Source of the DNA: Macrostomum lignano
Lineage: Eukaryota
Direction of reading: 5' to 3'
Assembly: GCA_002269645.1 (NCBI GenBank)
Contig: NIVC01000900.1
Coordinates: 400,117-464,116 of the forward strand
DNA length: 64,000 bases
In this document: positions 7,003-46,310 of the stretch, piece by piece
How positions within the stretch are numbered: position 1 is the first letter of the stretch
How the letters are laid out: each line of letters begins with the position of its first letter
Made by a program: the position numbers and the translations under genes
The notes under the pieces: generated by a model
The model's database searches: none
Told to the model about the DNA's origin: nothing
The model's input: only the letters and a program-made list of their open reading frames with translations

Positions 7003-7614
<612 letters not shown>

Positions 7615-8030
7615 GCACTCGAGACTCGGTAGATTAAATGGAGCAGTCCTTTGAAGTGAAGCGCTCATAGATTCTATTTTGCAGAAGAGCGTAGAAGCAC
7701 TGATAATTTGTGGCTGTAACAAAATTTTGGCTGCTTCTGGTGTAACGCGCCCAGAGCTTCAACTTTTATACACGTTCATGCATGTGTTTAAATCTGTGCA
7801 CGCATCTGCGCTAGCTCGTAAAAGTAGATATAAGTTACAGCAATGGGAGCCTCAGTCTTTTGGTAACACATCTGCCGTGTCTGCACACTTGTGCACTGCA
7901 GCACTTCACGGGCAGTCACATGTTTTACACTTACTGTAATATAAGGAAGTCGAAAAGCAGGTTGCCTGTTTGCCTGTTGCCTGTTATTGCAAATGGAGGA
8001 CAGATGATTGATGTGCTCTTGTTGGCTGCT
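7615..8030 (-). pseudogene. 5' fragment (upstream region plus first 18 codons) of a third IFIT-like paralog
   Basis: 7668-7615 encodes MSASLQRTAPFNLPSLEC versus MNASLQRTAPFNLPSLEC at 22675. Upstream motifs taaaagttgaagctctgg and atcagtgcttcta match 22575-22660. The frame then runs straight into the TATC array. Confidence 0.85.
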
Positions 8031-10752: not shown

Positions 10753-10769
10753 ACGCGCTGTCAAAGATG

Positions 10770-11200
10770 CTGTTAGAGGGTAGCATCACAGAGCGCGCCT
10801 CTCGGACAGGTCGGGAACGAAAGCTGCGCCGCCGACCGAATCCAGAACGCCAGCGTCAGCCGACATACGAAATGCCGAGTGCGCGCCTGTCCCCGCCGAT
10901 AGGGTGCCTGCACCTCCGGCACGGGATGTGGGCAGTACGACTCGGCGCGTATGATGTGTGTGACCTGGCAGCCGGAGTCCCTGAAAGCACAACAGATCAC
11001 TTGGGCGGACCAAGGCCAGGGCGGCGATACAGTGCTGAGTTAGAAACATCTCAAGCGTCTTCTTGTGGCTCGAGCGAGTCCGTCAGCGTCTAGGTCTCAG
11101 CAGCGTTGTACAGCAAGACGGTCTCCACCACCGCCTGGAATAGTTCCGCCCTCGGGCCTCGGAGGTAGGGCCTCGGATTGCAGGACTGGCTTCACAGAAC
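10770..11200 (-). mobile_element. Decayed RTE-like LINE fragment (post-RT region)
   Basis: Minus strand reads ELFQAVVETVLLYNAET*TLTDSLE and RAESYCPHPV...QAPYRRGQARTR; homologous to 21640-21730. Confidence 0.75.
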
Positions 11201-12408
11201 AAAAGTCAGTCGAGGCAATGACTGTGATTAAAGATTTTACTCCTCTCGCTCCTCTATATTCATACTAATTTAAGCGGCTCCCTACTGGAGGGCGCCTAGT
11301 CCAATAAAATCTAGTAAAGTATAGTAAAAAAGTCTAGTAATCTAGCATAATAAAAAAATACATATACATAACTACAGAATTACAGAATTCCACAATATGA
11401 CGCTATTGTGAACACTACGGCCAATACCAAAAGTCAGGATCAACTTTGTGCGTAACTAACTGAAAAAAGTGAGTATACTCTTAGTCATACAAAATCCTTG
11501 AAATTCAGATAGCATCGGAAATATTTCAACACTCGCATGCATTGATTCATAAAGTGCATACCAATAAGAGTAACCTATGTAACTCCAAAATACTATTTAA
11601 ATATCAGTAGGAATACCAAGCCATTTTCCACCCGTCGAACTACCCAGCCCTGACAATTTTTTCTGTGCCAGAACGGAGCAAAGCAGGCACACGAAATGCA
11701 AAAAGACGAGTGAAATTTTGTTGTGCACATTCTCAAACAACAGTCAAGTCGCCAGCCCTCCGGACCGTCGAGATATTCGACGATTCTGCCAGAAGGTCGG
11801 ATTTTTTTCCCATAAGTGCTAGTGATTTAATACACCTCTGTGCGTCAATCAGCACTGTGCCTCAGTGCAGCCTTGCCAAGCCTCAAGGTGTAAAAGTTAG
11901 TCATGAATCTTGTGTGCCTGCTTTCCTCCGTTCCGGCGCAGCAAAAAGATTGTCTGAGGGATTCCTCTCTGATACGAGCGTGTTACGGATCTGTACGATT
12001 TTTATTTTAGAAAGGAAACGGCTCCGTCGAGAATCACCAAACTAAAAATTTTCAGGATTTGGTACATATGCTTTTTAAGCTATTCATATAATGCAGATTG
12101 CTCAATGCTGCACAGTGAATATAACTGGGCATAGCACTGTATTGCCTTGAACGGAATATCTAAAATTGCCCAGACTTAACAAGAATCGGTTTGATTTAAC
12201 AATGCCTTTGAAATAAAAAGCTGGGGTTTTCAGAGCCAATGCTTTCTTGCTTTAAACATATATCGAAGAGAAATTTACAATTGTGACAACTCCAAAGGTA
12301 TACATAGGTAGATACTGAAAAATTTTGGGAATTGAAATCGTCTGACAAGGATAAAAAATCTCTGTATTGTAAAATGACCTGAGCGTGTCTCATTTTACTT
12401 GACGATCA

Positions 12409-15406
12409 CTAGTCAGTAGCCTCACCAGCTTGGACTCTAGTGGCCTCACCAGCTTGTACTCTAGTGGCCTCACCAGCTTGGACTCCAGTGGCCTCACTAG
12501 CTTGTACTCCAGTGGCCTCGCCAGCTTGTACTCCAGTGGCCTCACTAGCTTGTACTCCAGTGGCCTCACTAACTTGTACTCCAGTGGCCTCGCCAGCTTG
12601 TACTCCAGTGGCCTCGCCAGCTTGTACTACAGTGGCCTCGCCAGCTTGTACTCCAGTGGCCTCGCCAGCTTGTACTCCAGTGGCCTCGCCAGCTTGTACT
12701 CCAGTGGCCTCGCCAGCTTGTACTACAGTGGCCTCGCCAGCTTGTACTCCAGTGGCCTCGCCAGCTTGGTCTCCAGTAGCTTCACCAGCTTGTACTACAG
12801 TGGCCTCACTAGCTTGGACTCCAGAAGCATCACCAGATTGTGCTCCAGTAGCCTCACCAGCTCGAACTCCATTGGAGAAAACGGCCCACGTCTCCTCAGC
12901 GAACTCCGCTGCCAGGTGCGCCACATCGTACGCCGTCTTTCGGCACTCTCCGCCTCCCGACCAATCAGATTCGAGCTGCTGATTGAGCTCTTTCACCAGG
13001 ATCTCAGTCGAGTGCTTCTCGTTGTTAACCAGGTAGACCCAGCGGACAATCCAGCTGTCCTCACTTGACAGAATTCTGTGCTCACGACTCACCATGAAGT
13101 TATATATGTCTCTGGTGTCTCTCGATTGGTGAAAGTTGTGATCAATTCGCTTCAATTCTTCTAGCAGGCATTTTTTCACGTTTTTAAGCGATGCAGCATC
13201 TTTGTTTTCTTTGAGCAGCTTCATCTGCGACTCGAGCTCGAATGCCTTCCGCTCTGTCTCGGAACTAAGCTGGTTGAACTGCCTTTTATAGTCGCCTCCA
13301 AGCTGCTTCTTCAACTGGCCAAACGCGTGAGGATATGAGAACTCTCGACCCGATCCCTTAAGCCGAACTGCCAGCGACCGATCGAGGACTTCCTTCGCCT
13401 CCTTCAGCACCGATACGATCATGTTGTTCATTTCTTGAACTTCTCTACCAGTCTCCTTCATCTGCAGCTTCGTCATGAGAAATCGATTCGATCTCATGAG
13501 GTTTCCGCGATCGCCGGCGCCTTCAGCTGACCGAGTCGAGCCCGCTTTGCTCGTTAGCAGATTGAGCTCCAAGAACTCAGCGATTCTGAGCTTTACAGAC
13601 TTCCTTAAATCGTCCAAATCCGATTCAGTTTCAATAACGAAGCTGTTGGAATCATCTATAGTGAGTTCGATCTTGGCGCACAGCTCGTACAACTCTCGGC
13701 GGAAGAACAGCGAGTCTTTTCCAGCTTGAGCTGATGGTGACGCATCCGCCATCACCCTTTCGGCAGTTTTCTGTTCGGACTTTCGACGCTCAAGAATGTC
13801 GAAAATTCGAGGAGCCGCATCGCGACATCCGCACTCGAGACACTCCTGAAAATGTTTTAGATCAGCCTCGGGATTCTCTAGAAGTGACTGAGCCAGCAGT
13901 TTGTTTTTACTTTCATGCTCATCTGGAAGCTTCCTAAAACAGTCTGCCGCTGCATCGAACTTTCTATTCTTCATTAGAAAGCGACCAAGGTGCTCCAGAG
14001 CGAACTCATTACCTTCATCTCGTTCTAATGCGGTTCTGTAAAGCGATTCGATGTCCAGCTTCTTCTTAAATGTGCCAAACAGAGAAGCAAACCACGCCAG
14101 GTACTCTTCTCTGCCTTCTTGTAAACGGAAAAGATCCTCAAAGAAGGCCTGTTTCTTTGCGTAAAACACCATTTCTAAACTGGACTGGGCCTCTACAGCA
14201 GCGATGCACGACTCTATAGCTTCGTCCGTATCACCCTGCTTCATCAAATACAAAGCCTTGCTAAACAGAATAACTGCCACATCTTTGTTATACATTGAAA
14301 ATATCTGACGAAGTGAGTCGAAGTGAGCTACAGATTTATCTTTGCCTAAACTTTCGCTCTGCAGTTCCAGAAGTTTCAGCTCGATCCAAAGATTACCAGG
14401 TGCAGCTGCGACTTCTTGGCCTTTTTTTAGCAGTTGCATTGCTACATCTGTACTCCCGATTTCGCAGGCTGCACCCGCCATCTCCAAGTAAAATCCGGAG
14501 TCGCTTATTGAAAAGTCTGAACTTTTTACATCGTCCAGTAGAGCCTTTCTTTGCTGGTCAAAGCTTTTTTTGTTCGCCAGTTTAGATGCCGAAATATTTT
14601 TGCGCACACAACGTACATGAAAAACGAATGCTCTTTGAAGCTCTTCGGGCTTTGCAGAAACATGTCGGTAGCTTTTTCAACCAGCTGGCAACACAATTTG
14701 TGGTTTACATTGTGAAGAATTGCTTCTGCATAGTTGGCATAAAAAATGGAGGTTGTGAGATTCTTCTTCTCCCCAATCTCTCTGGCGGTGCGCCACAGCT
14801 CCAACAATTCACTGTCGGCCTGCTTTTTTGCCGTCTGCCTGTTGCACCGAGCCTTTAAAAATGCCTCACCATAAAGCCAATAGAAATTTTCTGGCTGTAT
14901 TTCTTTGGCCCTGGAAAAAGCCTCAACACCAATAGCATACTTTTTGGGTCCGAAACAGCCAAATGTGACACCTTTGACTCCGAAGACTTGAGCTCGTTTG
15001 TTAATGTCATTCCACAGACTGCTGAGCTTACGAAGTTCCTGTGCAAGTGAGTCCTCTTCACGCTTCTGGAACTTTTTACTTGTATTTCCGCGCATCTTTT
15101 TGAGGTGCAATACGTCAGCTCTGATAACATACTCGCTGGATACGTGCAGGTCAGTCTGATTGTCTGACTGAATTTGAGCATCAATGCGTCGCGCCTCATC
15201 CAAGAGTTCTTGCGCTCTGACGAAATCCACGCGCATATTTGGGTATGTAGGTATGCCAGCGTAGTGAGGTAGGCGACCTTCTTGTGAGGCTCTCTTTTAA
15301 TCTTTCGTTCTGTGGTCTTGATCACGTCTTCGATGTTGACTTTTGTACTTTCCTCGTCAGGACGCCAAGTAAAGTGACACTCCAGCTGGTCCAAGGTCTC
15401 AACCAT
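12409..15406 (-). pseudogene. IFIT-like TPR protein paralog 1, intronless, about 999 aa if two 1-nt frameshifts are corrected (pseudogene or sequence errors)
   Basis: Starts MVETLDQLECHFTW (vertebrate IFIT N-terminus is LxQLxCHFTW). Then AYLTTLAYL, QELLDEA, FGPKKYAIGVEAFSRAKEIQPEN. Three ORF pieces (14855-15406, 14526-15236, 12409-14607) are colinear with the intact paralog at 22675. Length 2998 + 2 nt gives 1000 codons. Confidence 0.8.
12420..12865 (-). repeat. 24-bp coding tandem repeat encoding (QAGEATGV)n at the C-terminus of paralog 1
   Basis: Plus-strand unit cttgtactccagtggcctcgccag, about 18 copies, in frame up to the stop at 12409. Confidence 0.93.
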
Positions 15407-16089
15407 CGTAGCAGCGGACCCTGTGAAACTTTTGGGTACAAAATTTGCTTTCAGTCGTCTAAGTAAGTTAAAGAAATGTTTTTTTATTGTCCTGTATTGA
15501 AATATATGTTAGATTAATATTATCACTGAAAACATGCCAAATACCGAAGGCGCACTTAATCGCAAACCTACGAGCGTAGTACGAGGAGAGTTAGCACTAC
15601 TTGCAATGCGAGTGTCTCGCTTCTCTTTACTCCAAAGCCTTTCTCTAACTGCGTCTTTTAAGCAAAAAAGATGAAGAATACGAGCTAGTTGAACACTTAT
15701 GGGGCAGATAGTGCGCACAAAATGCATCTTAAAAGCTGTGTCGGTTTTACAGTGCTGCCCTATGCATTGTTTGAGTTCAATTTGTTGTGTACTCTCTGCT
15801 TGCTTATGTGGTTCAGAGCAATTTTAGTGTTTGTGTACATAAATTTACAGGGACTGTTACAGTGACAGGCGACAGCAAGCGCAAACACTTCAACCGCATA
15901 CAATATTAATCATTGTTTTCTAAGAGCTGATCTAAAGTACATGTTCTCAGAATCAAAGCACGCAGGAAAGCTTGCTTTCGCCTGTTCTGTGCGTTCTGCG
16001 CGTCCATGCCTGATAAGGCTCAAGACTTCGTTGAGCATCCCTCGATGCGCGTAGAGTGTGCATATGTCGTCGTAGACCTGAACACTGTC

Positions 16090-16290
16090 CTGCGTAGGTT
16101 TGAGCGGTCTCTGTTCGAGACGCCACATAAGAACGGAAACTTCCTGGAGGACTTCTCATGGACCTCTCCAGACTCTCCTGAAGAGGCAGGACATGGTGTC
16201 GGTCAACACCCGTTTTCGCAAGCCATCGGGAGGACTTTCAACCTATGTGTGCTGCAAGCGAGGACGGCAAGAATGCGCGTGGCCGAAAAG
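16090..16290 (+). mobile_element. Decayed LINE AP-endonuclease fragment (RTE-like)
   Basis: KNGNFLEDF, then after a frameshift LLKRQDMVSVNTRFRKPSGGLSTY; this matches the N.NG..L / NT.F.K pattern of RTE endonucleases. Confidence 0.6.
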
Positions 16291-16849
16291 CAACACAGAG
16301 GCAAACAGAACTCAAACATGTGCTTGTGCGCTTTTGGGAGCGCCGCCGCGCCGTTAACTGCCGGTCCATCACACCACTGACTCCTCGTCTCCTCGGAGGC
16401 CTCAAATTCAATAACTCTATAGAAATATACTGTATAATAGCAGCCGGCAATAACATAGCTCTCAATAATCAAATACCAAAGACTTTGACTAAGGCTTACC
16501 GATCGATATAAGCTTCTCTCAGAGATTTAGCCTCTCGGTTCATGTTAGTTTGTCTCGAGTTCTCTTGAGGCTGCTTCGAGGCTGCTACGAGTCTGGATTT
16601 CAGCTCAGATTTTTCGCTTATATTTATACCCGTTTTGAGTCGACCTTGAGCTCAAACCGGTTTTTTGATGAGTTTACGAAAGGAATTGATTTGACAGATG
16701 AGATTTTCGAAAAGAAGCAGTGAAACTTAGGTCAATTTAAGGTTAACGTTTACATTATTTGCGAGTTCTAAAATTAAATGTTGCGAACCGGTTTTTCTTA
16801 TAATGAAATCGTAATTCACTGTTTTCGTGATAATACTAACGCATGCAAG

Positions 16850-19800
16850 GTGGGTTCAGCACGCCTGTGTAGCATGAGACAGACCAGGCCTACGAGCTAA
16901 GGTCTGCGATCCTACACACCTGCACCCCCTCTATTCTGGTGCAGGAATATGTACGGAGCTGAAAAACCTGTTTATCTACATGGAGGACGAGCGACCCCAG
17001 ACACACCGACACCGTGCCTGGATTTCGGCTCGCAGCTGCATCACCAAGGCCGACGAGCTGCGTCACCTGCTAGTGGCTACCAACCCGGAGCTACCGGCAA
17101 ACGGTGTCGTAGTTCACAAGACCATCTCCAAGCCGGGCGGAGATGGTTTCACGGCTATTCTTGGACTGTCGGATAGCTGGATGCTCTGCTATCCGGACAT
17201 GTCCCTCATCTCTGTCGGGCTGATGCAGATTCAGCTCTTTAGCTTTGAGTCTGACGCCACCCGTCCACCGCCCCCAGAGAAGCGTAAGCGGGCGAGCGGG
17301 CACCGCCCGCGGAGAAGCGTAAGCGAGCGAGCGGGGGCTCTGCCGGGCGGAAACGCCCAGGAAAAGAAGCTCCCGGTCGTCACGACCCCTCCGAGGACGT
17401 GGACCCTGTCAGAGGGAAAGCCGCGAAAGCTGCAGCAACAGGCGGACGTGGAAAGGGCCGGAAACCCACCCGGAACACTATCCGCTCTGGTCTGACTCAG
17501 CGCGCGAAGCAGCTGCTGGACACCGCCAGGGCCCACAACCGCAGCAACCCCCAGCCCAATGTCACCACTGCGGCCCCCCAGAAAACCGGGCTGAGAGCGA
17601 GAATGCCGCCCAGGTGGAGGCATCGCCCTCGACCATGGAGACCATCCGGGAGGAGCCCATGGAACTGGAGCCTGGAGCTATCGGCGAGGCAGAAGAGGTG
17701 GCTCTCCTGCACAACTCGCCCTGAGCCGGCAGGAAGCTGCGCGGACCACTCGTGGATTCCCCGGAGTGGACATCCTGCAGCTAAACCTACACCACTGCAT
17801 CGCGGCCTCGACCAACCTGATGCGGGTGGCAAACTTTGCGAAACCGGGCATCATCCTACTCCAGGAGCCCTGGACAAAGAAAGGTAAGATTCTGAATATT
17901 CCTGCTGGTTTTGACTGTTTTCAAGACCACCAAAACCCCAGAGCAGCCATGTTCGTGTCTACCCATCTCAAAGCTTGGCACAGACCGGACCTCTCTGACA
18001 GAGATCTCTGTGTGATTCAATTCAACCATATTATCACCAACCGCACGGTCATCATCGCCTCGATCTATATCCCTGGCGATGGCCCCGCGGTTCCACCCAA
18101 CCTCATCTCCCTCGTGGACTACTGCTCTAACTGTAGGTTCGAGCTGCTGGTGGCGGGCGACGTCAACGCTCACCATACCCACTGGGGCAATAATACTTCC
18201 AACAGCAGAGGCGAGGAACTCCTTGCTTACATCTGCACCACCAATACTGAGTTTTGCAACATTGGTGGAACCCCCACCTTTGACAACGGGCGATGGACGG
18301 AGGCCCTCGACGTTACCCTCGTCTCCCATGGCTTGACTCCTTTAGTCAAGGACTGGGAGGTTTGGGACGAATAGGAATCTCTGTCTGACCATCGCTTCGT
18401 TCGTTTCCGATTGCAATCCTCTTGCCCCAAGCCTCACATCCTGTGGAAAAGGAACGTCCGGAACACTGACTGGACGGCTTTCACGGAAACCCTGAAACGC
18501 CAGACAGATCAGCTGTTTACCGCCGCTCCAACCACCTGTCAGGAAGTGGATGACCTTGCAGACTTGCTCAGCAAGACCGTCCTGACAGCCCATGAGGCTT
18601 CCTGTCCTCTTAAAGCCTACAAAGGCACAATATCCGCCCCCTGTTTGCACCCGGCGCTTGGATCCCTCCGGCGCAAGGTAAAGTACTTCCAACCGTAAGC
18701 TCGCAAGAGCAAGGACCCAGCTGACCTGGCCGCCTACCAAGAAGCGATCCGCGACTTTAAGCGTGAAACCAGGAAAGCCAAGTCCGACAAATGGGCCAAT
18801 ACTGCGCGGAGTTAGAAGGCACCCGTCCTACTTCGCGCGTAGTTAAGGCTCTCACTCTTGACAAAATGTAAAAGCTCTCAGTTATTAAAAGACCGGACGG
18901 CCGGCTCGCTGAGAACCCTGGGGAATCGCTGGACATCATGCTCACCAGCTCTTTCCCACGTGCCGCACAGCAGCTAGGCCCACCGGACCACTCTCCGGGC
19001 GGACAGATCCTGGCTTCGACCATCATTACTAGAGAGAGGACGGCTCGCGCCGCAAAATACTTCTCTCCTTTCAAGTCACCAGGATCTGACAACATTTATC
19101 CTGCCTTCCTCCATGAGGCAGTTATAAATGACAGGTTTCTCGGCCTCCTCTGCAACCTCTTCAAGGCCAGCATTACCCTCGGGTACGTGCCAAAAGCCTG
19201 GCAAGAGGCTACGGTAGTCTTCACACCCAAGCCAGGGAAGGGAGACTGATGGAACGGCTGGTGCTCTGGCGCCTTCTCCTCGTAGAGCTGAGGAACTCCC
19301 CGCTCTCCCTAACCAGCACGCCTTTCGTTCTGGACGCTCCATCGAAAGTGCGCTGCACGCCATTGTCGACAAGCTGGAGCGCGCCGTGCTTGGCAATGGA
19401 TACGCGCTCTCGCTTTTCCTCGACATTGATGATGCTTTCAATAATGTGCTCTTTGAAGTCTTTAAGCGGGCCCTGGAATCCCGGGGCACGCACGAGCACC
19501 TCACTCGCTGGATCATGTACATGGTCTCCCATCGTACTGCCACCTCGCGCCTCCTGGGACACTCGCGCTCCGTGGAAGTCCAGAAAGGCGACCGCAAGTC
19601 CTAAGCCCGAAGCCCGATCCTCTCCTAAGCCCGATCCTCTGGAATATAGTCATGGACGAGCTGCTTTGCAGCCCGCATCCGACCCAGTTTTAGAAGGTCG
19701 GCTATGCGGATGATGTTACCGCCACTGTGGCTGGACCATCACCCGCGTCCTCAGGGACTCCTTCAAGCTTCATCCACCGTCGCGAACGCTGGGCACACAG

Positions 19801-20695
19801 CTGCGGTCTCAGTTCTCTGAGTCTAAAACCGTGGCTATCATGTTCACCAGCCGCCGAAACTGGAGGATCGAACCGCTCTCCCTCTATGGCAAACCTGTTG
19901 CCATGGAGAAACAAACCAGATGTCTGGGCGTCACCCTCGACCACAGGCTGAGCTGGACCCCGCACGTCCAAACCAAAGCCCACAAAGCCCTCGCGACTCT
20001 CGCGCAGATCCGCAGAGCTTTCGGCGCTACCTGGGGCCTCACCCCCCGCCGCCTCTGGTGGATTTACACTGCCATTGTTAGACCGGCCATCTCCTTCGCC
20101 GGCTTCATTTGGAACAGTGCCATAGAAATGAAAGGGGTTCTTTAGGTTCTAAATAGGGTGCAAGGCCGCGCTTGTCGAGCTATCATGAGCGCGGCTCCCT
20201 CTGCGCCCTTCGCTGGCATGAACTCCTTGGACATTCCCCCCTCTACCTCTTTGTTGGGTGTCCAAATCCAGAAGCAGTTTGCCTTCAGAAAGCGGAATTT
20301 CCGGCCGCATGGCGACCTCAGCCTGCGAGACCTGGAAGAAGCGAGAGGCATTCCACCACGTCATGAAGCAAGAGACAACTGGAAACCCCATGAAATCCAC
20401 TGCTTCACTGACGGGTCCCAAATCAACTCCGCCTCTGGCTACGGCTACTGCATCGTGTCTGGAGGGAGAACTATGGCGACCTTCTCCCAACACACCGGCA
20501 CCTGCTCCACCACCGTCTTCCAGAACGAAGTTCTCGCCATTAGCTCCTGCGCCATGGAGCTGTACAATCAGCGCGTCTGGGGGAAGGAAATTACCCTCCA
20601 ATCAGACAGCCAAGCGGCGATTCACGCCCTTGAGCGCAGCACCACCTGCTCGCGTACAGTCCTCGACTGTATCGGGCAGCTCAACCGCTTAGGCA
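16850..20695 (+). mobile_element. Degenerate near-full-length LINE with ORF1 remnant and APE-RT-RNase H ORF2 (LOA/R1-group-like), 3'-truncated
   Basis: APE: MDILQLNLHH..LLQEPW..GDVNAHH..LDVTL. RT: SPFKSPGSD, AFRSGRSIESALH, FLDIDDAF, GYADD. RNase H: CFTDGS..FQNEVLAI..SDSQAAI. Many stops and frameshifts. Confidence 0.92.
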
Positions 20696-20705
20696 CAACA
20701 TATCT

Positions 20706-21090
20706 TTTGATATTTTGTGCCTTTCTTATTGTTCTATCGATATTCATAAAGCTTTTTGTTCAGAAAATTAGGATTCCATGTTAATTTTTTATTCTACGTA
20801 TATTTGTGCACGTCTAGTGCCTAAAAAACCATTAAAATGGCACAGCTTGGCTCTTTGCTTTTATGAGTCTATTTCATCATTCTTAGCTGACTGTGTAACA
20901 AATATGCGTAGCAAAAATGATAAAATGGATTCATAGAACCAAAGATTTGGAGCTGTACAATGCATTTTTATTATTTTTAGGTACAGGAAACGTACGTAAA
21001 ATAAATAATTAATATAGAATCCTAATTTTCTGAACGAAAAGCTTTACAAATATCGATAGAGCAATAAGGAAGGCACAACATATCAAAAGA
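20706..21090. mobile_element. About 385-bp imperfect palindrome (MITE-like hairpin) abutting the truncated LINE
   Basis: 20706-20790 is the reverse complement of 21012-21090, and 20800-20885 of 20905-21010; centre is near 20895. Confidence 0.75.
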
Positions 21091-21309
21091 TGAGCATTGG
21101 ATCTGCCTCCTATCAAAAGCAAAAGCAATTTGTGTGCTGAAAAAATGAAAAATTCTGATCTCCGTAGTGTATTTTTCCTGGAAAACCTGCCTTCTAAAAT
21201 TTTCTAAGAAACAATGTTTCCCGTCTTTTCGTCCTTGTTTTGATCGCGTGACATTAAAAATTTTGGTTGTGCAAATTTTTATCTTACTGCTTCTAGTAGT
21301 CTGCTTGCA

Positions 21310-21900
21310 CTGTATTTCGAAGATCTCTACACCGCCACTGTTAACGCGCCACCACCCCGCTGCCAGACAATCCCAACTTCCGCCAGAGACGCCGTTGTCG
21401 GAAGAGGAAAATTAATTTTAGCGTTGCACCAGCCGTGCACTGCCTGCTAGAGCACATCGAGGCTGAAATTTAGTGCGGAGGCAGTCGACGGAGATTCTGC
21501 GTTGCCAGTAGTTTATCTACCTCAGCGGTCTGGTTTCTGGCTTACGCGTGGATCTGTAGCGTCGCCGTGGGCGTGTCTTGGCTGCCTTTCGTTCTGTGAG
21601 GGGAAGCCCTGCAGTCTGAGGCCCTGTCTGACTGCCCTGGCACTGTTTCAAGCAGTGATCGAGACCGTCCTGCTGTACAACGCTGAGACCTGGACGTTGA
21701 CGGACTCACTCGACCAACAAGTAGACGCGGCACAGCTGGTCTGCTGCGCGAAATATTCAAGATCGGCTACGAGCGATGGACCAACGTGGCACTTCTATCT
21801 ATACGCGAGTCTGTAGGCTGTCGTGCGTCGTACGCTCGAGCAGCCTAGTCCCGACGGACACCGCGTTGTACGCGTGTCAGTGGAGGACCGCAGCCAGGGT
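21310..21900 (+). mobile_element. Decayed RTE-like LINE fragments
   Basis: LFQAVIETVLLYNAETWTLTDSLDQQVDAA; homologous to 10770-11200. Confidence 0.7.
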
Positions 21901-22674
21901 CAGTACGCAAACCCGGGTCTGGGAAAGGGGCACGAAAGGACCAAGCCCTTGAGCCCCATCACCAAAATTATTTAAAAATTAGGCGACTTCTTTTCAACTA
22001 AATGTTTCTAGTGAAAGTTTTTAGGAAATGAGGTTTCACTATTCATTTACTCCTTAAGAAATAAAGTCCTTGTGAATAATATTGGAATTTTGAGTCATCG
22101 CAATGGTGCTTTTTGACGTACTTTTACGAGCATATTCTAAACAACGATACTAACAAAGGACAACATTGCCTGTAAAAGATTTGATATCGCTTAAAATTTA
22201 GCTTAAATTTCAGAGAGATAAATGATAAGAAGCGTTACCATTAAAATTAATCTTCAGAGCTTCAGCTACATTTCCAGGAAAATTACAGTGGGAAACGTAC
22301 ACAGAACAGTTGGAAAAATGAGTTAGTGAAGTACAGGTCTGGATAAGAAAGGCTGGCGCCAACAAAAGCTCACTGCACAGTGCGCATCGACTCTCCCAGT
22401 AAATGCAGAAAGAAAGCTGCGAGTGCACAATACACAGACAGTCTGCTCTGCCAGACGAAACACCAACAAGAATGGCCCACCGCCGTTGTTCACTCACATG
22501 TACGAGCGTACGTCTATTTTTAGCTGCAGACGCATAAACAAATTTATCCACTACGTACGTACATTAAAGTTGAGTAAAAGTTAAAGCTCTGGATTCAATT
22601 GCACCAAAAGCAGCAGCGACAGTTTTTGTTCCAGCCGCATCAAATCAGTGATTCTATATAGAATCTAATTTCAC

Positions 22675-25290
22675 ATGAACGCTTCACTTCAAAGGACTGC
22701 TCCATTTAATCTGCCGAGTCTGGAATGCCACTTTCTATGGCAACCAGAGAAGTCGAGCACAAAAACCAACATCGACCAGGTGATTGAACGGTTGCTGGAG
22801 TACAGGCTGTCAGACTCTGAGATGTCAGTTGTCTACCTGACCACCCTTAGCTACCTATCAACTCTGCCACCGTTTCCGAACTTCGCCAAGGCGCAGCAAT
22901 TCCTTGATGAAGCTGAACAAGTGCGCGACACGGACGATTTCTGGCGGCACAGCGGCTTCATCCTGTCCTCCATGCGGCTGTGCATCCGCCAGATTCGGCG
23001 GGGTCGGCCGCTGATGCATCACGATATCGCTGACGAGCTGGCCGAGCTCACCAGCCAATGGGAGGGCAGCGCCGACGTCAGGGCGACCGTTTATGGCATC
23101 AAAGGCGCGTCTCTAAGATTCTTCGGGCCGCTGAAGTACAGAGAAGGAGCTGAGGCCTATGGCTTGGCCTTGGAGCTGCAGCCAGACAACTTCAGATGGC
23201 TTTGGGGGAAAGCGTACCTGCTGGCCCGGCAAACTAGACAGGGCAGACCCGGTGAGATCCCCGAGAGTCAGCTGAACTTATGGAGTCGAGCCTACGAGAT
23301 TTCCACCAGGGATGGAATCCGAAACCCGACTTTTTTTGCCAATTTCTCCGAGGCGGCGCTTAGCGACCGAGCTCTGACCGCGTGGTGCGAAAGTTTGATG
23401 GATGAAGCAGTTGGACTGTTGGAACGGCTGGGAAGAGACGAGAAGGCCAAGCACCCGGTAGCCTTTCTTATTGGTATAAAAGTTTACAAAAGGTTTAAAT
23501 CATTTGCAAAGTATTATACGCTTCTTGATTTAGCACAAACAGTCGACCGATGCAAAAGTTCTAGCTTTTATTTGGAGATTTCTAGACTGCATATGAGAAA
23601 TGGCGATAAACAGAAGGCTCTGGAGGCACTCAGAATTGGTAAAAATGCTGCAATGCACCCTGGTAACCACTGGGTCGACCTTGAACTCATTGAGCTGGAA
23701 GCTGAGGATGTTGGAATAGAAAATACGCTCCAATCCTTTGACTCCCTGCTGGCGTCAAACTATCGCGTATATGACCGGGTCATTGCATGCATTCGCTTCA
23801 GAAAGGCGCACTTTTTGTTTAAATGCAACCGGAACCAAGAAGGCTTCGAGGAATGCCTGCTAGCATTCAAGACGTGTCCGGATGCTGTGGAGAACTTTCA
23901 GGACTATCGATATGAGGAAATTCTGCAAGCATTACAAAACTGGCCAGATCATGAAGAATATGAGGCCTGGTTTCGCACTAATATCATGTCCTGCATTCAG
24001 CGCCAAGACAGCATTCACATCGAGGATCAGTTTCACAGAGGGCTGTTGAGAAATCAGCGCAACCATTTCGCCTGGGAGCACCTGGGGAGGTTCTATTTAA
24101 AGGAACACAAGTACCAACTGGCTTTCGACTGTTTCAGTCAGTTACCGGGCGACTCGGACCTGCCAGACGGTACACGTAGAGACAATTTGCTGACTGAAGC
24201 CCTTCTACAGAATCCACAAGCCAGCCTGGAAGACATTGAGCTCTGCTTACAACTTGGTCGTCACAAAGCTGCACTAAGAGTGTTCGACTTCTTAAACGAC
24301 TGCAAAACTGACCTTGTAAAACGGGTGTTGGAAATGGCGAACGGGGGTGACTCGCAAAGGGCCAGGGACTCCAGTCTGATGTTTTTCAGCCGTCGCGTTT
24401 ACGAGCTGTGCGCCCGAGCTCAAAACCTGGCTTATGACTACGTCAGCGATGCGGCTGATCAGTCAAACGTGGCTGACACGGTGCGCAAACGAGTGAGGGA
24501 CCTGCTGGAGCTCGGCTCCCTCAGCACCGCGGCCGCAGCTCCAGCTGCAGCAGGCAGCGATCGCGGCAACTTGATGCGACAGGCGAGGTTCGAAGCAGTC
24601 AAGCTGCACTGCCGAGGCAGAGGGTCCACAGAGGAGTGCTGCAACTCGATCGTGCTCACTCTGAAGGAAGCCAAGGAGCTGCTCGACCGGTCCTTTGCTC
24701 ATCAGTTCCAAAGCGAGACATCCGAAGAGTTCTCCTACATCCACGCTTTCGGCCAGATGAAGCAGAGGTTAAAGTCGGATCCAGAGTACAACCGGGAGCT
24801 GAAGGAGATGCAGTCCAAAGCGGATAAAAAAGCGCTTGAAGCAGAAGCACTGATGAAGGCGATTCGCAGAAATCGAAGTCTGCGAACTGCGGAAAAAATT
24901 CGCGAATTTCTGCACGCCGGAATTAAAAAAATGAGCGCCAACTTTCGCAACGCCAAAGCCACCAGCTGGAAGTTCGACTTCATGGCGAATCGCGAGCGAC
25001 GAATTCTGGAGGAGGAAAACCGCTGGCTCATTCGCTGGATCTACGGAGTGAACATGGAGAAGCACAAGGTAGAACTGCGGGTTGGCGATATCGAGCAGCA
25101 TCTGGCAGCCGACTGGTCCGGCTGGGACGGCTGCCGCACCGCCTACGAGCTGGCGAACTTGGCCGCCGAGTTCGCCGAGGAGACGTGGCTGATTCTGGGG
25201 CCGCAACGGCTGGACGGTGACAGCGGTTCTGCGGGTACCGAATCTGAGGAGAATCACCTTGCCGCAGAGTTTGCGACTCTGCGACTCTAG
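22675..25290 (+). CDS. IFIT-like TPR protein paralog 2 (871 aa, intact, intronless) with a C-terminal putative HEPN-like domain
   Basis: Uninterrupted ORF. LECHFLW, YLTTLSYL, QQFLDEAE and LRFFGPLKYREGAEAYGLALELQPDN..KAYLLAR align by eye with vertebrate IFIT1/5 subdomains. TPR-like AWEHLGRFYLKEHKYQLAFDCF. Conserved with paralog 1 along its whole length. Confidence 0.88.
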   Translation: MNASLQRTAPFNLPSLECHFLWQPEKSSTKTNIDQVIERLLEYRLSDSEMSVVYLTTLSYLSTLPPFPNFAKAQQFLDEAEQVRDTDDFWRHSGFILSSMRLCIRQIRRGRPLMHHDIADELAELTSQWEGSADVRATVYGIKGASLRFFGPLKYREGAEAYGLALELQPDNFRWLWGKAYLLARQTRQGRPGEIPESQLNLWSRAYEISTRDGIRNPTFFANFSEAALSDRALTAWCESLMDEAVGLLERLGRDEKAKHPVAFLIGIKVYKRFKSFAKYYTLLDLAQTVDRCKSSSFYLEISRLHMRNGDKQKALEALRIGKNAAMHPGNHWVDLELIELEAEDVGIENTLQSFDSLLASNYRVYDRVIACIRFRKAHFLFKCNRNQEGFEECLLAFKTCPDAVENFQDYRYEEILQALQNWPDHEEYEAWFRTNIMSCIQRQDSIHIEDQFHRGLLRNQRNHFAWEHLGRFYLKEHKYQLAFDCFSQLPGDSDLPDGTRRDNLLTEALLQNPQASLEDIELCLQLGRHKAALRVFDFLNDCKTDLVKRVLEMANGGDSQRARDSSLMFFSRRVYELCARAQNLAYDYVSDAADQSNVADTVRKRVRDLLELGSLSTAAAAPAAAGSDRGNLMRQARFEAVKLHCRGRGSTEECCNSIVLTLKEAKELLDRSFAHQFQSETSEEFSYIHAFGQMKQRLKSDPEYNRELKEMQSKADKKALEAEALMKAIRRNRSLRTAEKIREFLHAGIKKMSANFRNAKATSWKFDFMANRERRILEEENRWLIRWIYGVNMEKHKVELRVGDIEQHLAADWSGWDGCRTAYELANLAAEFAEETWLILGPQRLDGDSGSAGTESEENHLAAEFATLRL

Positions 25291-25299
25291 CTGCGACTC

Positions 25300-25937
<638 letters not shown>

Positions 25938-26647
25938 TATAGATAGTGATTTTCATTTTTAGTATATTAGAATATTGGATTAATATTTAAGTAATCTTAT
26001 AGCACGTCTAGTACATACTACTTGTCAGTAGAGTCTTTGAAATGGCGTTCTTCTGTTGAATTAGATGTATCTACGCTCGTATTGAGGGAAGCTATACGCA
26101 TGATCAATATTGTGTTGAGATTTTGTAGCTTTCTTTCTCGTGCAATTTTTTAAGTTTAAAGTGCAAAAATTGAAACCAAAATTTATCCTCAATGATTTCC
26201 TTAATCGCTCAGTATACTCGAACTGTGAATTTCTTTATTTTTTGTTTATTTTAATACAATTTACCGCAGCAAACCAGCGATCTCAGACCTACCTGCTTCC
26301 AAAAGACAGTTAGTGGCTGGAGTCAAATCAGCATGAAATATTTAGAGTCAATATTCCTGAAAATGTTTTTGTATGATTTTTAATCTGCAGTAAATTTTGC
26401 TCATTGACAACTTATTAATCTTTGCTGGTGTACGGAGCTCCAGAAATCACGGGAAAAGCATGACACTAAAGCTATTAAACTATGTCAGGAGCGCCAGTTT
26501 TAGTTTGTCAGGAAAGTTACTTTTTCGAGATTTTTTAAAAAGAATGGGTACCATTTTGAGACTGTCAGGAAGCTGTCAAAAGCAGCATTCTGGGCCGATT
26601 TTCTTTTTCTGAGATTTTTTAGGATGCCATTTCGGCGCTGTCAGGGC

Positions 26648-30241: not shown

Positions 30242-32050
30242 AAATGCCCCCCTCCTAGTTTTTCATGGTCGCTATGGAAACACGTTTTTTCTAAGACCAT
30301 AACTTTCCATTTAATTTACTCCTAAATATGTATTTGCATAATGTATTCAACATAGCTTGCCGATAAAAACATCGGTGGTTCTAAGCCCTCAAGATTCTGG
30401 CGCACCAGGTAAATATGAATTTCTCGTGTTGACAAGGAACCGATCCACAGTTTTTTGCTCTTATCATAGAAAGACAGCCCGAAAGCGCTGAGGGTGCTCC
30501 GCTTGTATTTGCAAACAAGGAACGCGGATAAGGTGAAGTGGAACTGCACTGTTTACAACTTCTGGCATTGAAGTGCAGTTTTCCCACCACGCAATCGTCT
30601 TGATGTATGCGCGGAATTTACATTTCTGGGGTTTTTGCGTTGAGGGAATAATTAATGAAGGGCATGGTTAGTAACAGTAGAAAATCTACTCATATCCCGC
30701 GCATAAACGTACGAGCGTAATCCATTAAACGTTTGTTTGTTAACGCTTGATTCTGAGCTGGCGCGCTGGTGAGCACAGGAGTCCGCTGAGTGGGCAGAGC
30801 TGTCCAGAAGGCGTTGCGCCAGGGTGTCTGCAACTCTTTTGCAAATATTTTCTCCAATTGTGGTTTACAGTGGAAAAACATTCCACCTGACATGAAGCAC
30901 GGTCTTGTTCCTCCTGACCACCAGGTTCGCAGAGCCTTAATAGAGAAGTGTATTATTCAATAAATGTCTTCAGGAAACAGGTGATCGCTAAATGATTTAA
31001 TATCCTGAACAATGTCGCTTCATATAGGTGAATAGCACCTCGCATCTATTCACTGTTGATCCGAAAGTTATTTAGTGAGCTGTAATTTCCTGATCTCAGT
31101 TAACGTCTTCCGTCCGTCCGTGAAAGTTTTTTCCTTCGGATAGTAATCTGCATTGCATTCAAGCTTGGGCTCTTGGATGGCCCTGCGCGTACTTGGTACT
31201 TAACTCGTACATGTTGAATAACCTTTCCAATTTCAAACATGCGGTAGTTCTTGTGGGCGCTCTACTGGCTCTATTGATATTTAACATCGGAATGCAATAA
31301 TGGCTTCGTTGGAGTGTGTGCGGATTTGAATCTGCCCAAGGGATGTTTTGGTGTGTGGCGACCGATGCAGATACGAGAATGCACGCGCTGGGGAAATGTA
31401 GCACTGATAATGGGAAGGTAGAACCCATAGCTGGCCCTAGCTACATCCGTCATTTTTGGATAGGTAAAGTTTTAAACAACACGTTCTGAGCATTAACGCA
31501 CTAACCATAAGGAAGTGGACGCATTTAGTGTCCCCATTAACCATTGTATATTTTAGCGTTGCCAACCAAGCTGATTAAATAAATATATTGCTGGAAATAT
31601 GTTACTGAAAAATCTAGGAAAGAAATATTACAATTCCAGGTAGCCTTCAACCAGGAAGTGTCAGCTTGCTATGGTATAGTTCGGGAGGGCATCGTATAGT
31701 GTGTGCGTGTGTAGCTATTTGAACGTGTTGCGTACTCCTTGCGCTCCCTCTCCCTCTCGGCTCCCAACCCTCTTTCTCTCTCCTTCTGATCTTTCATTTG
31801 CTGTCTGCTTCAAGGCTTCTAGGAGGAGGAGGAGAAAATACTGGAAAAGGGTAAGAGAGGCAGAGAGACAGAGAGCTAGCAGGGCATTACGAAGGTTGGT
31901 TGGGCGCGCACTGCAAGCCTCCCAACTATAGAAGAGGGGCCCGGTCTTAATTCAAAAAATCCAAGGGAGATTCGCATCGCAACAGAGCGCGCAACAGGCC
32001 ACGCGTTGCTGGAGCTGCAGCCGAAATCATTTCTGCCAACTGGAGCCGAC

Positions 32051-42307
<10,257 letters not shown>

Positions 42308-45058: not shown

Positions 45059-46310
45059 TCAGTGAGTTGCGAACGGAGTCAGCAGATACCCAAGAAAGAT
45101 GACAACGATGGCAACGCTGCCAACCAAAGCCATCAGCCTCTCCAGGGCCAGCGCCGCCACCACCCAGTCGGAGCGGCTCGGTCCATGAACGCCCTCGACA
45201 CCGACGTCCACCTTCGAGTCGCTGGTGGAGGTGCACAGCAGGCGTCCCAGGCAGGTCACGAACACGAGACGGAGACACGGCGGCATCGGCTGGGTGTCCG
45301 CAGCGAAGTGGAATCGAATCACGACCGACGTGAGCAGCAGGGACAGCGACGACAGCACCATGGCCGCCGTGATGAAGGACGCCACGACCGGCATTGATTG
45401 CGACTTAGGCAGCAGGCCGTCCAGCAGCAGCAGGAACACCGTGTAGCTCAGCATGATGGTGATGCCAAAGCCCAGCTTCTCTCCGGACTCGACTGGCACG
45501 ATGAAGATCAGCAACTGGAGCAGCGTTAGCAGCAGCAGGGGAGCCACCACGTTCAGTAGATAGTAGTTGGACACGCGCTCGACAGTCATGCGAATAACGT
45601 AGCTTGGCAGCGGCAACTTTGGCTGGCCCTTGAGCATCTCGTAGTACCTCAGATGCACGAATGTGCTCAGATTCAATAGTCTCCACTCGCTATTAACGAC
45701 GTAAATCGCCAGCTCATTGTTCATTGGGTTGCCAATGGCAGGCTGGAGAAGATGGTGACCCCGACCTTGGTCGCTGCAGAACAGTTCCATGTGAGACGTG
45801 CTTGTCGAATGGAAATAGCCTCATGTCGAATTTGCAGGAGAACTCCCATTCCTGCTTCCAGGTTGTCTCTGCAACTGTTGCCCTGGGCGAACTGGAAGTG
45901 AGGATTATGGGAAACTGCGGCTTGAGCAGCTGGTTGTCGCCTACGCCATTGTAAATGAGAATCACGGGGAACCAGATTTGACTGGAGTCCCAGTCCATGA
46001 CAGTCACGTTTCCAAAATCGGCCGGATCCCAGACCAGCCGCTCCTCGGTCCAGCCAGCCTGAAGGTAAGCGGATATCTTGACAGTCTGCTTAGCGCTGTC
46101 CACAGCTACAATTTGGCTGAGCAGAAAGGTGAAATTGAATAGCATCACCTGGTCCGGGTCCAACACTGGCCGAACTATCGGACTGTAGTCCGTGATGTTG
46201 TTCTTCAGATACTTCATCAATTCTATTTGATAATCTCTCTTGGAATGAACAGATTGATTGAGTATTACCATGGTAACAGAAAGTATTAACCAAAATCGGC
46301 TGTGCGACAT
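45059..46310 (-). pseudogene. Intronless Cys-loop ligand-gated ion channel subunit (nAChR-like, non-alpha), one frameshift; about 417 aa if corrected
   Basis: Signal peptide, RPV, W.D..L.WDP..F, IWFPVILIYN, Cys-loop CKFDMRLFPFD, then a frame change near 45791. M1 YYLLNVVAP, M2 SGEKLGFGITIMLSYTVFLLLL, M3, short loop, M4. Confidence 0.88.

What the first reader, a model, noticed from the sequence alone, without database searches (positions are those of the whole stretch)
24550..25200. IFIT-like sensor fused to a putative HEPN-like effector domain (candidate sensor-RNase immune system)
Seen: after the TPR region both paralogs carry a roughly 200-aa extension that is among their best-conserved regions: DRGNLMR, LKEAKE(V/L)LDRS, FSYxHAFGQ, F(M)xxRExRIL, W(I/L)(V/I)RW(V/I)YxVNxEKH (25048-25065; 13012-13029 in paralog 1) and CRxxAY..AxLAAEFAEETW. 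Established: vertebrate IFITs are about 470-490 aa and have no catalytic domain; HEPN RNases have an N-terminal acidic helix and an RNxxxH-type motif. Inference: the ..LD helix followed by NxxKH resembles NxDKH-type HEPN-like domains. That would give an RNA sensor coupled to an RNase in one protein, analogous in logic to OAS-RNase L or bacterial TPR-HEPN defence proteins. Caveat: the residue before N is Val, not the canonical Arg.
Basis: inference. Interest (0 to 1): 0.88.

Follow-up and report, generated by a model that had tools for sequence, protein, structure and literature searches.

The report
IFIT-like protein with orphan C-terminal domain
A flatworm (Macrostomum-type) gene encodes a relative of the vertebrate antiviral IFIT proteins that carries an extra, well-conserved C-terminal domain matching no known family; the proposal that this domain is a HEPN RNase could be neither confirmed nor excluded.

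Summary
ORF 22675-25290 (+, 871 aa) and its paralog (12409-15406, -) share every cited motif at the cited coordinates. Residues 761-840 are the best-conserved stretch of the protein.

The N-terminus is homologous to IFIT: a family profile hits IFIT5 at E=2.7e-6, including the LECHFTW motif. The only relatives found are Macrostomum lignano hypothetical proteins and a tandem array in one unidentified eukaryotic ENA assembly.

The C-terminal extension has two parts: a helical linker (about 561-749) and a core of about 95 aa (750-842). The core also occurs without any TPR. It has 16 invariant residues in 11 sequences: F757, R773, E774, I777, E781, W784, W788, N793, K796, H797, A827, A830, E832, F833, E835, T837. 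It is under purifying selection (dN/dS 0.16-0.34) and stays nearly identical between paralogs whose TPR parts diverge.

HEPN membership is not shown. No homolog has the defining Arg (the motif is V/D-N-x-x-K-H). Pfam, PADLOC, NCBIfam and PDB give no match. The AlphaFold model is all-helical, but confidence at the motif is below 50, and Foldseek finds only TPR and 14-3-3 folds. Motif spacing and position remain HEPN-compatible.

Verdict: a variable sensor joined to a constant, novel output domain; its biochemistry is open.

The parts
22675..25290 (+). p2: intact, intronless 871-aa ORF (stop at 25288-25290). IFIT-like TPR region + helical linker + conserved C-terminal core + short tail.
   Evidence: Colinear in one frame with M. 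lignano P0006 (877 aa, res 2-869).
22675..24354 (+). p2 residues 1-560: TPR solenoid. Residues about 7-172 (22693-23190) are the part aligned to IFIT5, including LECHFLW (res 16-22) and FGPxKY (res 150-155).
   Evidence: Profile A3 vs PDB: IFIT5 3zgq E=2.7e-6. Weak Pfam TPR hits. Residues 461-550 are modelled as TPR-like helices with pLDDT 84-93.
24355..24921 (+). p2 residues 561-749: helical linker region with FFxRxxYELCA, DRGNLMR (24559-24579), LKEAKELLDRS (24661-24693) and FSYIHAFGQ (24730-24756). Basic (pI 9.2). Present only in TPR-fused members.
   Evidence: Absent from core-only ORFs P0013-16.
24922..25200 (+). p2 residues 750-842: autonomous conserved core of about 95 aa, predicted as four helices. 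Invariant F757 R773 E774 I777 E781 W784 W788 N793 K796 H797 A827 A830 E832 F833 E835 T837.
   Evidence: 11-sequence alignment A6. Conservation profile. dN/dS 0.16-0.17. No family, PDB or fold match.
25048..25065 (+). VNMEKH (res 792-797): the N-x-x-K-H motif proposed as HEPN-like. N793, K796 and H797 are invariant. Residue 792 is V (Macrostomum) or D (ENA clade), never R.
25162..25188 (+). AAEFAEETW (res 830-838): the most conserved helix. A830, E832, F833, E835 and T837 are invariant.
25201..25287 (+). p2 tail, res 843-871. Acidic and not conserved. It ends with a second LAAEFA (res 862-867).
12409..15406 (-). p1: paralog split over three frames. Res 12-63 in frame -1 (15397-15242), 58-272 in frame -3 (15272-14589), 283-841 in frame -2 (14541-12877). 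The 732-aa ORF 12409-14607 holds the C-module. Either a recent pseudogene or an assembly with indel errors.
12877..13512 (-). p1 equivalent of the finding region (DRGNLMR..EETWAVF). The core is 12877-13155 and VNNEKH is 13012-13029.
   Evidence: 87% DNA identity and 90% aa identity to M. lignano Mlig006963g2, dN/dS 0.25.
12414..12875 (-). 24-bp tandem repeat (19 copies) read in frame as a GEATGVQA-type tail of p1. The M. lignano ortholog has no such tail.

Best explanation
p2 belongs to a lineage-restricted multigene family, found only in Macrostomum and one unidentified eukaryote. The family has three parts.
1. An IFIT-homologous TPR solenoid of about 560 aa. This is the recognition part. By homology it probably binds an RNA end or another linear ligand (inferred, not shown).
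2. A basic helical linker of about 190 aa.
3. A previously undescribed all-helical domain of about 95 aa that serves as the family's constant output module.

Shown:
- The core is an independent evolutionary unit. It occurs fused to the IFIT-like TPR, behind a different N-terminus (P0003), and as core-only exons.
- It is under purifying selection.
- It is kept nearly identical, probably by gene conversion, between tandem paralogs whose TPR parts have diverged to 30% identity.

Inferred:
- Seven of the 16 invariant residues are packing residues: W784 and W788 against the Ala face A827/A830 (plus the near-invariant A834), and F757, I777, F833.
- The other nine are polar: R773, E774, E781, N793, K796, H797, E832, E835, T837. 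That is too many polar invariants for a mere scaffold and points to a specific binding or catalytic site formed by three neighbouring helices.
- RGG-repeat tails directly follow the core in two paralogs. With the IFIT ancestry, this suggests the site acts on RNA.

My commitment: an RNA-directed effector or binding module that works like a sensor-coupled output. My estimates are about 0.3 that it cleaves RNA and about 0.2 that its fold is a divergent HEPN. It cannot be filed as a HEPN member on present evidence.
For: - IFIT homology.
- Family restricted to M. lignano and ENA assembly ERZ25074608. Four hits among 1.84 billion representatives, names, further members. Nothing in JGI metagenome contigs or IMG/VR.
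- Core autonomy: P0003 has another N-terminus. P0013-16 are core-only with no TPR within 6-10 kb.
- Selection: dN/dS 0.25 and 0.17, 0.34, 0.16.
- Constant versus variable parts: ENA genes A and B show a C-module at 94% aa identity with dS 0.087, against upstream TPR at 30% identity with dS 1.34 and dN/dS 0.66. p1 vs M. lignano shows 87% DNA identity in the C-half and 65% in the N-part.
- Invariants.
- No sequence similarity of the core to the family's own TPR profile (hhalign probability 0.4%).
- RGG tails in P0002 and P0003.
- All-helical prediction.
Against: - No biochemical or expression data exist.
- The AF2 model is weak in the core (pLDDT 43-73) and below 50 exactly at residues 779-798, so the proposed clustering of the polar invariants is not shown.
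- The core is acidic to neutral in the TPR-fused members (pI 4.7-6.2), which is not typical of an RNA-binding surface.
- The IFIT5 triphosphate-pocket positions, as far as they are aligned, are mostly not conserved (residue roles from my own knowledge). RNA-end binding by the TPR part is therefore only an analogy.
- Low dS in the C-module may reflect recent gene conversion rather than function alone.
Confidence: 0.55

Rival explanations
1. The core is a divergent HEPN-fold, metal-independent RNase. Helix 762-777 would be HEPN helix-2 with the acidic residue E774. Helix 781-792 would be helix-3, ending in x-N-x-x-K-H in place of R-N-x-x-x-H. The helices 801-839 would be a kinked helix-4. K796 or R773 would replace the missing Arg. 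Ligand binding by the TPR would license RNA cleavage, probably through dimerisation.
For: - N793 to H797 has the same spacing as RNxxxH, and the position after the Arg is typically N, D or H (PMC3710099).
- G, P, S, N or T at residue 791 and the AF2 secondary structure place the motif at a helix end and loop start. That is where Rx4-6H sits (PMC3710099).
- Invariant acidic residues lie in the preceding helices.
- One HEPN family (Parep1/8) keeps the H but not the R.
- HEPN domains fused to TPRs occur in animal lineage-specific expansions such as DZIP3-like.
- RGG tails occur in paralogs. P0004 carries two tandem C-modules.
Against: - The Arg is required for activity in KEN and PrrC and is absent in 11 of 11 sequences.
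- There is no Ex3[KR] motif.
- No HEPN-clan Pfam hit at E<=10 in 13 sequences.
- No PADLOC, NCBIfam or PDB hit.
- No HEPN structure among the top Foldseek hits.
- Only about 45 residues precede the motif in the core-only copies, which is short for three HEPN helices.
- The strongest conservation, AAEFAEET, has no counterpart in HEPN descriptions.
Confidence: 0.2
2. The core is a non-catalytic homotypic interaction or oligomerisation domain, functionally like CARD, PYD or death domains. TPR-fused sensors and core-only proteins would assemble through it, and the polar invariants would form interface salt bridges.
For: - It is a small all-helical unit of about 95 aa.
- It occurs both fused to variable sensors and as multi-copy core-only units under selection.
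- It is homogenised between paralogs, as expected if all copies must recognise each other.
- Its surface is acidic or neutral.
- Many invariants are packing residues such as W, W, A, A, F and I.
Against: - Death-fold-type adaptors usually show little residue-level invariance. Here nine polar residues are invariant at 25-30% overall identity.
- No similarity to any known adaptor family in Pfam or PDB.
- The core-only ORFs lack an ATG and may be terminal exons of unknown larger genes.
Confidence: 0.2
3. The extension is only a continuation or cap of the TPR solenoid. It would be conserved for folding or for closing the ligand-binding groove, with no separate function.
For: - The region is entirely helical in the AF2 model.
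- The best Foldseek matches are TPR and 14-3-3-like repeat proteins.
Against: - Those Foldseek matches are non-significant (E>=0.07, TM<=0.23) and are probably driven by the true TPRs at 461-550.
- hhalign of the core against the family's TPR profile gives 0.4% probability.
- The core exists without any TPR.
- It is better conserved than the TPRs.
Confidence: 0.05

Closest known systems
Vertebrate IFIT proteins (IFIT5, PDB 3zgq/4hoq; IFIT1/2/3)
   Same: Both share the N-terminal L-x-x-L-E-C-H-F-T/N-W motif and the following TPRs. The family profile aligns with IFIT5 residues 13-175 at E=2.7e-6, including IFIT5 F151-G152..Y156 on the family's invariant FGPxKY. Both are (nearly) intronless, occur in tandem multigene arrays with pseudogenes, and have rapidly diverging TPRs.
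   Different: IFIT5 is 482 aa and ends with its TPRs. This family adds about 280 residues (linker plus core). Only the first 170 or so residues align significantly. The aligned IFIT5 pocket positions E33, T37, Q41 and K150 (roles from my own knowledge) are not conserved in the family. The host is a flatworm without an interferon system. Two papers in the library describe IFIT as restricted to jawed vertebrates (PMC3688568) or as a 'young' vertebrate family (bioRxiv 10.1101/693333).
HEPN superfamily RNases (KEN domain of RNase L/Ire1, PrrC/RloC, DZIP3-like HEPN fused to TPR in animals; PMC3710099)
   Same: Both are small all-helical domains at the C-terminus of a repeat-containing putative immune protein. 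Both have a conserved N-x-x-x-H at the end of a helix and an acidic residue in the preceding helix. Both show lineage-specific expansion.
   Different: There is no Arg at -4 to -6 of the His in any member and no Ex3[KR] motif. No sequence-profile or fold match was found. The most conserved element (AAEFAEET helix, W-x3-W helix) is not a HEPN feature. The domain is shorter before the motif.
OAS-RNase L and other sensor-effector antiviral systems
   Same: The logic is the same: a recognition module coupled to a constant output. The variable-sensor, constant-module pattern is shown.
   Different: Here both modules are on one polypeptide. There is no second messenger, no kinase-like or ankyrin module, and no demonstrated nuclease.
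Death-fold adaptors (CARD/PYD/DD) with domain-only regulators
   Same: Both are constant helical modules of about 90-100 aa attached to variable sensors, and both also occur as domain-only copies.
   Different: There is no sequence or fold similarity. The number of invariant polar residues here is unusually high for an adaptor.

Membership tests
IFIT | N-terminal L-x-x-L-x-C-H-F-T-W motif followed by TPR subdomain I, detectable by sequence profile | tested here: met
   Profile A3 vs PDB: IFIT5 is the only significant hit (E=2.7e-6, profile 7-174 / IFIT5 13-175). LeeLeChFtW aligns with LLELECHFTW. The motif is invariant in the family (L16 E17 C18 H19 F20 W22).
IFIT | Whole protein is a TPR solenoid of about 470-490 aa with no further domain | tested here: not met
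   p2 is 871 aa. The TPR-like part ends near residue 550-560. About 280 further residues form a linker and a core with no TPR similarity. IFIT5 is 482 aa.
IFIT | Conserved 5'-PPP/cap RNA-binding pocket residues | tested here: inconclusive
   Only IFIT5 13-175 is aligned. Y156 and F151-G152 coincide with family invariants. E33, T37, Q41 and K150 do not (K150 aligns with R149 in p2 and C in most homologs). Residue roles are recalled from the IFIT5 structure papers, not tested here.
IFIT | Induction by interferon or virus | not testable with these tools
   No expression data. No paper mentions the M. lignano loci.
HEPN | Rx4-6H motif: conserved Arg 4-6 residues before the conserved His | tested here: not met
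   In 11 of 11 sequences the positions -4 to -6 from H797 are N793, V/D792 and G/L/P/S/N/T791. None is Arg. Definition from PMC3710099.
HEPN | Polar residue (N/D/H) right after the Arg position, with His 4 residues further on | tested here: met
   N793 and H797 are invariant and have the spacing of RNxxxH.
HEPN | [quoted passage not shown] | tested here: inconclusive
   AF2 secondary structure shows helix 781-792, loop 793-800 and helix 801-810. Helix breakers occur at residue 791. pLDDT here is below 50.
HEPN | Conserved acidic residue in helix-2, typically Ex3[KR] | tested here: inconclusive
E774 and E781 are invariant in the two preceding helices, but neither is followed by K/R at +4.
HEPN | Four-helix up-down bundle of two alpha-hairpins | tested here: inconclusive
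   The model is all-helical (pTM 0.68) but the core has pLDDT 43-73. Foldseek against PDB and BFVD gives no hit with E<0.07 and no HEPN among the top 50.
HEPN | Match to a HEPN-clan sequence model | tested here: not met
   hmmscan against Pfam-A at E<=10 on 13 family sequences gives no HEPN-clan family. PADLOC, NCBIfam and PHROGs give nothing relevant. PDB profile searches give nothing. Caveat: this is far less sensitive than HHpred.
HEPN | Metal-independent endoRNase activity dependent on the His | not testable with these tools
   Needs biochemistry.

The most novel reading that the evidence does not exclude
An IFIT-type sensor, thought to be a vertebrate invention without enzymatic activity, exists in flatworms fused to a new autonomous 95-aa domain. 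The invariant R-E / E / N-x-x-K-H / E-x-x-E-x-T constellation of that domain would be the active site of a new (or extremely divergent HEPN-like) RNase. That would make this a single-chain 'sense and cleave' antiviral protein, with the effector domain also deployed on its own.
Probability: 0.2. Interest if true: 0.85.

Novelty: new variant of a known kind. Interest (0 to 1): 0.55.

Why it matters
If the IFIT homology and the output-domain reading hold, three things follow.
1. The IFIT fold predates vertebrates and interferon, which bears on how the vertebrate set of interferon-stimulated genes was assembled.
2. IFIT-like binders can be wired directly to an output domain. That would give a natural example against which the 'sequestration only' mode of vertebrate IFITs can be compared.
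3. A 95-aa orphan domain with nine invariant polar residues is a tractable target for discovering a new RNA-directed activity or a new signalling module in invertebrate immunity.

If the core turns out to be a plain structural or interaction domain, the finding is a lineage-specific curiosity.

Tried and rejected
- Full-length p2 against the 5.8-billion-protein index: no hit, because the word prefilter was swamped.
- Single-sequence AF2 of the full protein: pLDDT 41.8, unusable.
- DUF1722 hit on p1 (23.9 bits): seen in 1 of 5 members only, rejected as chance.
- Myb_DNA-bind_5 (E 0.08-0.1, 2 of 8 sequences) and SaeR winged helix (E 0.4): not significant, noted only as leads.
- PD-(D/E)xK, HNH, di-iron ExxH, RNase III signature, death-fold and SAM were considered by motif inspection. 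All were rejected because the spacing or the conservation does not fit (my own reasoning, no tool test).
- PADLOC, NCBIfam and PHROGs: nothing.
- JGI metagenome contigs and IMG/VR scans with the core patterns: no relatives.
- Exact look-up of p2 in public assemblies: not on record.
- HEPN alignments from the supplement of PMC3710099 for a profile-profile test: not held.
- A profile-profile test against self-built HEPN alignments was not attempted. With shallow alignments a negative result would carry no information.
- Literature search for the M. lignano locus names: none.
Full report
**What the window is.** The window is animal DNA.
- It carries microsatellites and minisatellites and LINE-type endonuclease/RNase H fragments.
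- It has a very long exon of a Slowpoke-type K+ channel (40220-42307) and a Cys-loop receptor (45059-46310, minus strand).
- The closest database proteins to the two paralogs are 'hypothetical proteins' of the flatworm Macrostomum lignano.
- Paralog 1 is 69-82% identical to Mlig006963.
- p2 has no relative above about 42% identity among 1.84 billion cluster representatives. Its exact sequence is not on record.
- So the window is most likely from a Macrostomum species or haplotype other than the sequenced M. lignano assembly. This is an inference.

**Checking the observation.** ORF 22675-25290 (+) encodes 871 aa.
VNMEKH is at 25048-25065 and VNNEKH at 13012-13029 on the other strand.
- The two paralogs align over 570 residues (37% identity, E=9e-108).
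- At the DNA level, only the last 210 bp or so of the conserved region still align between them (24977-25188 vs 13100-12886, 68%).
- In a four-way full-length alignment, the 40-residue windows 801-840 (0.49) and 761-800 (0.46) are, with 141-180 (0.47), the best conserved of the protein. The mean is 0.30.
- One correction applies. Paralog 1 is split over three reading frames, with shifts near 15236-15245 and about 14600-14615 next to A-runs. It is either a young pseudogene or carries assembly indels.

**The N-terminal part is IFIT-homologous.**
- Single-sequence searches gave only weak TPR hits.
- A profile of five family N-termini (A3) hit IFIT5 (3zgq and five further entries) at E=2.7e-6 over profile positions 7-174 and IFIT5 residues 13-175.
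- The diagnostic LLELECHFTW aligned to the family's invariant L-E-C-H-F-x-W, and IFIT5 F151-G152..Y156 aligned to the invariant FGPxKY. The next TPR protein scored E=0.02.
- Two papers in the library state that IFIT genes are confined to jawed vertebrates (PMC3688568) or are a 'young' family (bioRxiv 10.1101/693333).
- From my own knowledge, automatic annotations of 'IFIT-like' proteins exist for some cnidarians and molluscs. The presence outside vertebrates is therefore notable but not unheard of.

**Anatomy of the C-terminal extension.** Homologs were found only in two sources.
- M. lignano: P0001/5/6, P0002/7/8, P0003.
- One ENA assembly (ERZ25074608) of an unidentified eukaryote: P0004, P0010-16. 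There the genes form a tandem array, and the N-termini again start with LECHFNWKPE.
- Scans of JGI metagenome contigs and IMG/VR found nothing.

The alignments (A4, A6) split the extension in two.
- A helical linker, p2 about 561-749. It holds FFxRxxYELCA, DRGNLMR, LKEAKELLDRS and YxHAF, and is basic (pI 9.2). It is found only in TPR-fused members.
- A core of about 95 aa, p2 750-842. It has 16 residues invariant in 11 sequences: F757, R773, E774, I777, E781, W784, W788, N793, K796, H797, A827, A830, E832, F833, E835, T837.

The core is an autonomous unit.
- P0003 carries it behind a different N-terminus and before a long RGG-repeat tail.
- In the ENA organism at least four 133-aa ORFs (P0013-16) contain the core alone, with no TPR sequence within 6-10 kb.
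- These ORFs have no ATG and have an in-frame stop three codons upstream, so they are probably terminal exons.
- They are nevertheless under purifying selection (core dN/dS 0.16).

**Selection and the variable/constant pattern.**
- p1 against the M. lignano gene in L002: the finding region is 90% identical in protein, dN/dS 0.25. The core is 0.17. The preceding TPR tail is only 53% identical with saturated dS.
- DNA identity there is 87% in the C-half and 65% in the N-part.
- Two neighbouring genes of the ENA array: the C-module is 94% identical (dS 0.087, dN/dS 0.34). The upstream TPR part is 30% identical (dS 1.34, dN/dS 0.66).
- A 15-fold difference in synonymous divergence within one gene pair means the C-module is being homogenised (gene conversion or recombination) while the TPR part diversifies.
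- This is the architecture of a variable recognition module joined to a constant output module.

**Testing the HEPN idea.** The defining features were taken from Anantharaman et al. 2013 (PMC3710099):
- a four-helix up-down bundle;
- a polar residue after the Arg;
- an acidic residue in helix-2, often Ex3[KR];
- Arg and His both required for activity in KEN and PrrC.

Results against:
- The Arg is absent in all 11 sequences (V in Macrostomum, D in the ENA clade).
- No HEPN-clan Pfam family appears at E<=10 in 13 sequences.
- Nothing appears in PADLOC, NCBIfam or PHROGs, nor in PDB profile searches.

Results compatible:
- N793 and H797 have the RNxxxH spacing.
- Helix breakers at residue 791 and the AF2 secondary structure place the motif at a helix end.
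- E774 and E781 are invariant in the preceding helices.
- One HEPN family keeps the His without the Arg.
- TPR-HEPN fusions are known in animals.

The fold test failed to decide.
- AF2 with an 8-sequence alignment of p2 461-842 gave pLDDT 70 and pTM 0.68, all helices. It scored 43-73 in the core and below 50 at residues 779-798.
- Foldseek found only non-significant TPR, 14-3-3, LapB and Tom70 matches (E>=0.07, TM<=0.23). These are probably driven by the true TPRs at 461-550. It found nothing in BFVD.
- I therefore rate HEPN fold at about 0.2 and do not file the domain as HEPN.

**What the core most likely is.**
- It is not TPR by sequence (hhalign probability 0.4% against the family's own TPR profile).
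- About half of the invariants look like packing residues. W784 and W788, one helical turn apart, would face the Ala-rich stripe A827/A830/A834 of the last helix. This is an inference from helical periodicity.
- Nine invariants are polar. That is unusual for a scaffold or a death-fold-like adaptor at 25-30% overall identity, and it suggests a specific site.
- RGG tails behind the core in two paralogs, together with the IFIT ancestry, point to RNA.
- Against this, the core is acidic to neutral.
- I commit to 'constant RNA-directed output module of an IFIT-like sensor family, novel domain' at 0.55. The rivals are HEPN RNase (0.2), homotypic adaptor (0.2) and solenoid cap (0.05).

**Novelty and interest.**
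- The proteins are already in databases as hypothetical proteins, and no paper mentions them.
- The combination of an IFIT-homologous N-terminus, an orphan autonomous domain with a catalytic-looking constellation, and a variable/constant evolutionary pattern is a new variant of a known kind of immune protein.
- It is worth a structure prediction of the core, an HHpred run and a simple RNase assay.

Noticed in passing
window 12409-15406 (-): Paralog 1 is broken into three frames. The shifts are near 15236-15245 and about 14600-14615, the latter beside A5/A7 runs. Its C-module is still under constraint relative to M. lignano (dN/dS 0.25). It is either a recent pseudogene or has assembly indels.
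   Followed up: partly
window 7606-7768 (-) and 7004-7615: A 74% copy of the p2 5' end (22575-22738: about 100 bp upstream plus the first 18-21 codons) directly abuts a (TCTA)n array. The same microsatellite follows the p2 stop codon (25298-25940). It looks like a third family copy from which almost the whole coding region was deleted.
   Followed up: partly
window 25255-25287 (+): The p2 tail ends with HLAAEFATLRL, a second small copy of the core's NLAAEFAEETWL helix 33 residues downstream.
   Followed up: no
window 12414-12875 (-): A 24-bp tandem repeat (19 copies) is read in frame as a GEATGVQA-type tail of paralog 1. M. lignano paralogs instead have RGG/RGRGGSEHF tails (P0002, P0003) or a short tail (P0001). 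The tails after the core are hypervariable low-complexity sequence.
   Followed up: partly
L003 6001-6402; L004 10001-10402 and 11023-11314 (ENA ERZ25074608): Multi-copy core-only ORFs (P0013-16) have no ATG and sit among Ty3/gypsy-like elements with envelope-like ORFs (weak PF24664 hits). They are under purifying selection (dN/dS 0.16). The gene they belong to is unknown.
   Followed up: partly
L001 (ENA ERZ25074608), 9303-21641: A tandem array of at least three family genes. Each is split by a frame break or stop at a different place. P0004 contains two head-to-tail C-modules. The cause may be pseudogenes, assembly errors or real duplications.
   Followed up: partly
L002 10082-10552 (M. lignano NIVC01004191.1): An inverted partial copy of the C-module (75-91% to window 12949-13410) lies about 1.5 kb downstream of the Mlig006963g2 gene.
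   Followed up: no
window 40220-42307 (+), 32006-33082 (+): A single 695-aa open exon encodes the RCK and C-terminal domains of a Slowpoke/BK-type K+ channel. An Ion_trans exon lies 7 kb upstream. These are unusually long exons for an animal channel gene.
   Followed up: no
window 45059-46310 (-): A Cys-loop ligand-gated ion channel, with the ligand-binding and transmembrane parts in two adjacent ORFs.
   Followed up: no
window 17766-18374 (+), 20158-20784 (+), 10227-10709 (+): LINE-type endonuclease / reverse-transcriptase and RNase H fragments lie between and beside the two paralogs.
   Followed up: no
window 36001-40000: Strong negative GC skew (-0.6 to -0.3). Long ORFs on both strands (36844-38574 +, 36973-38550 -) indicate a large low-complexity or satellite block.
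   Followed up: no
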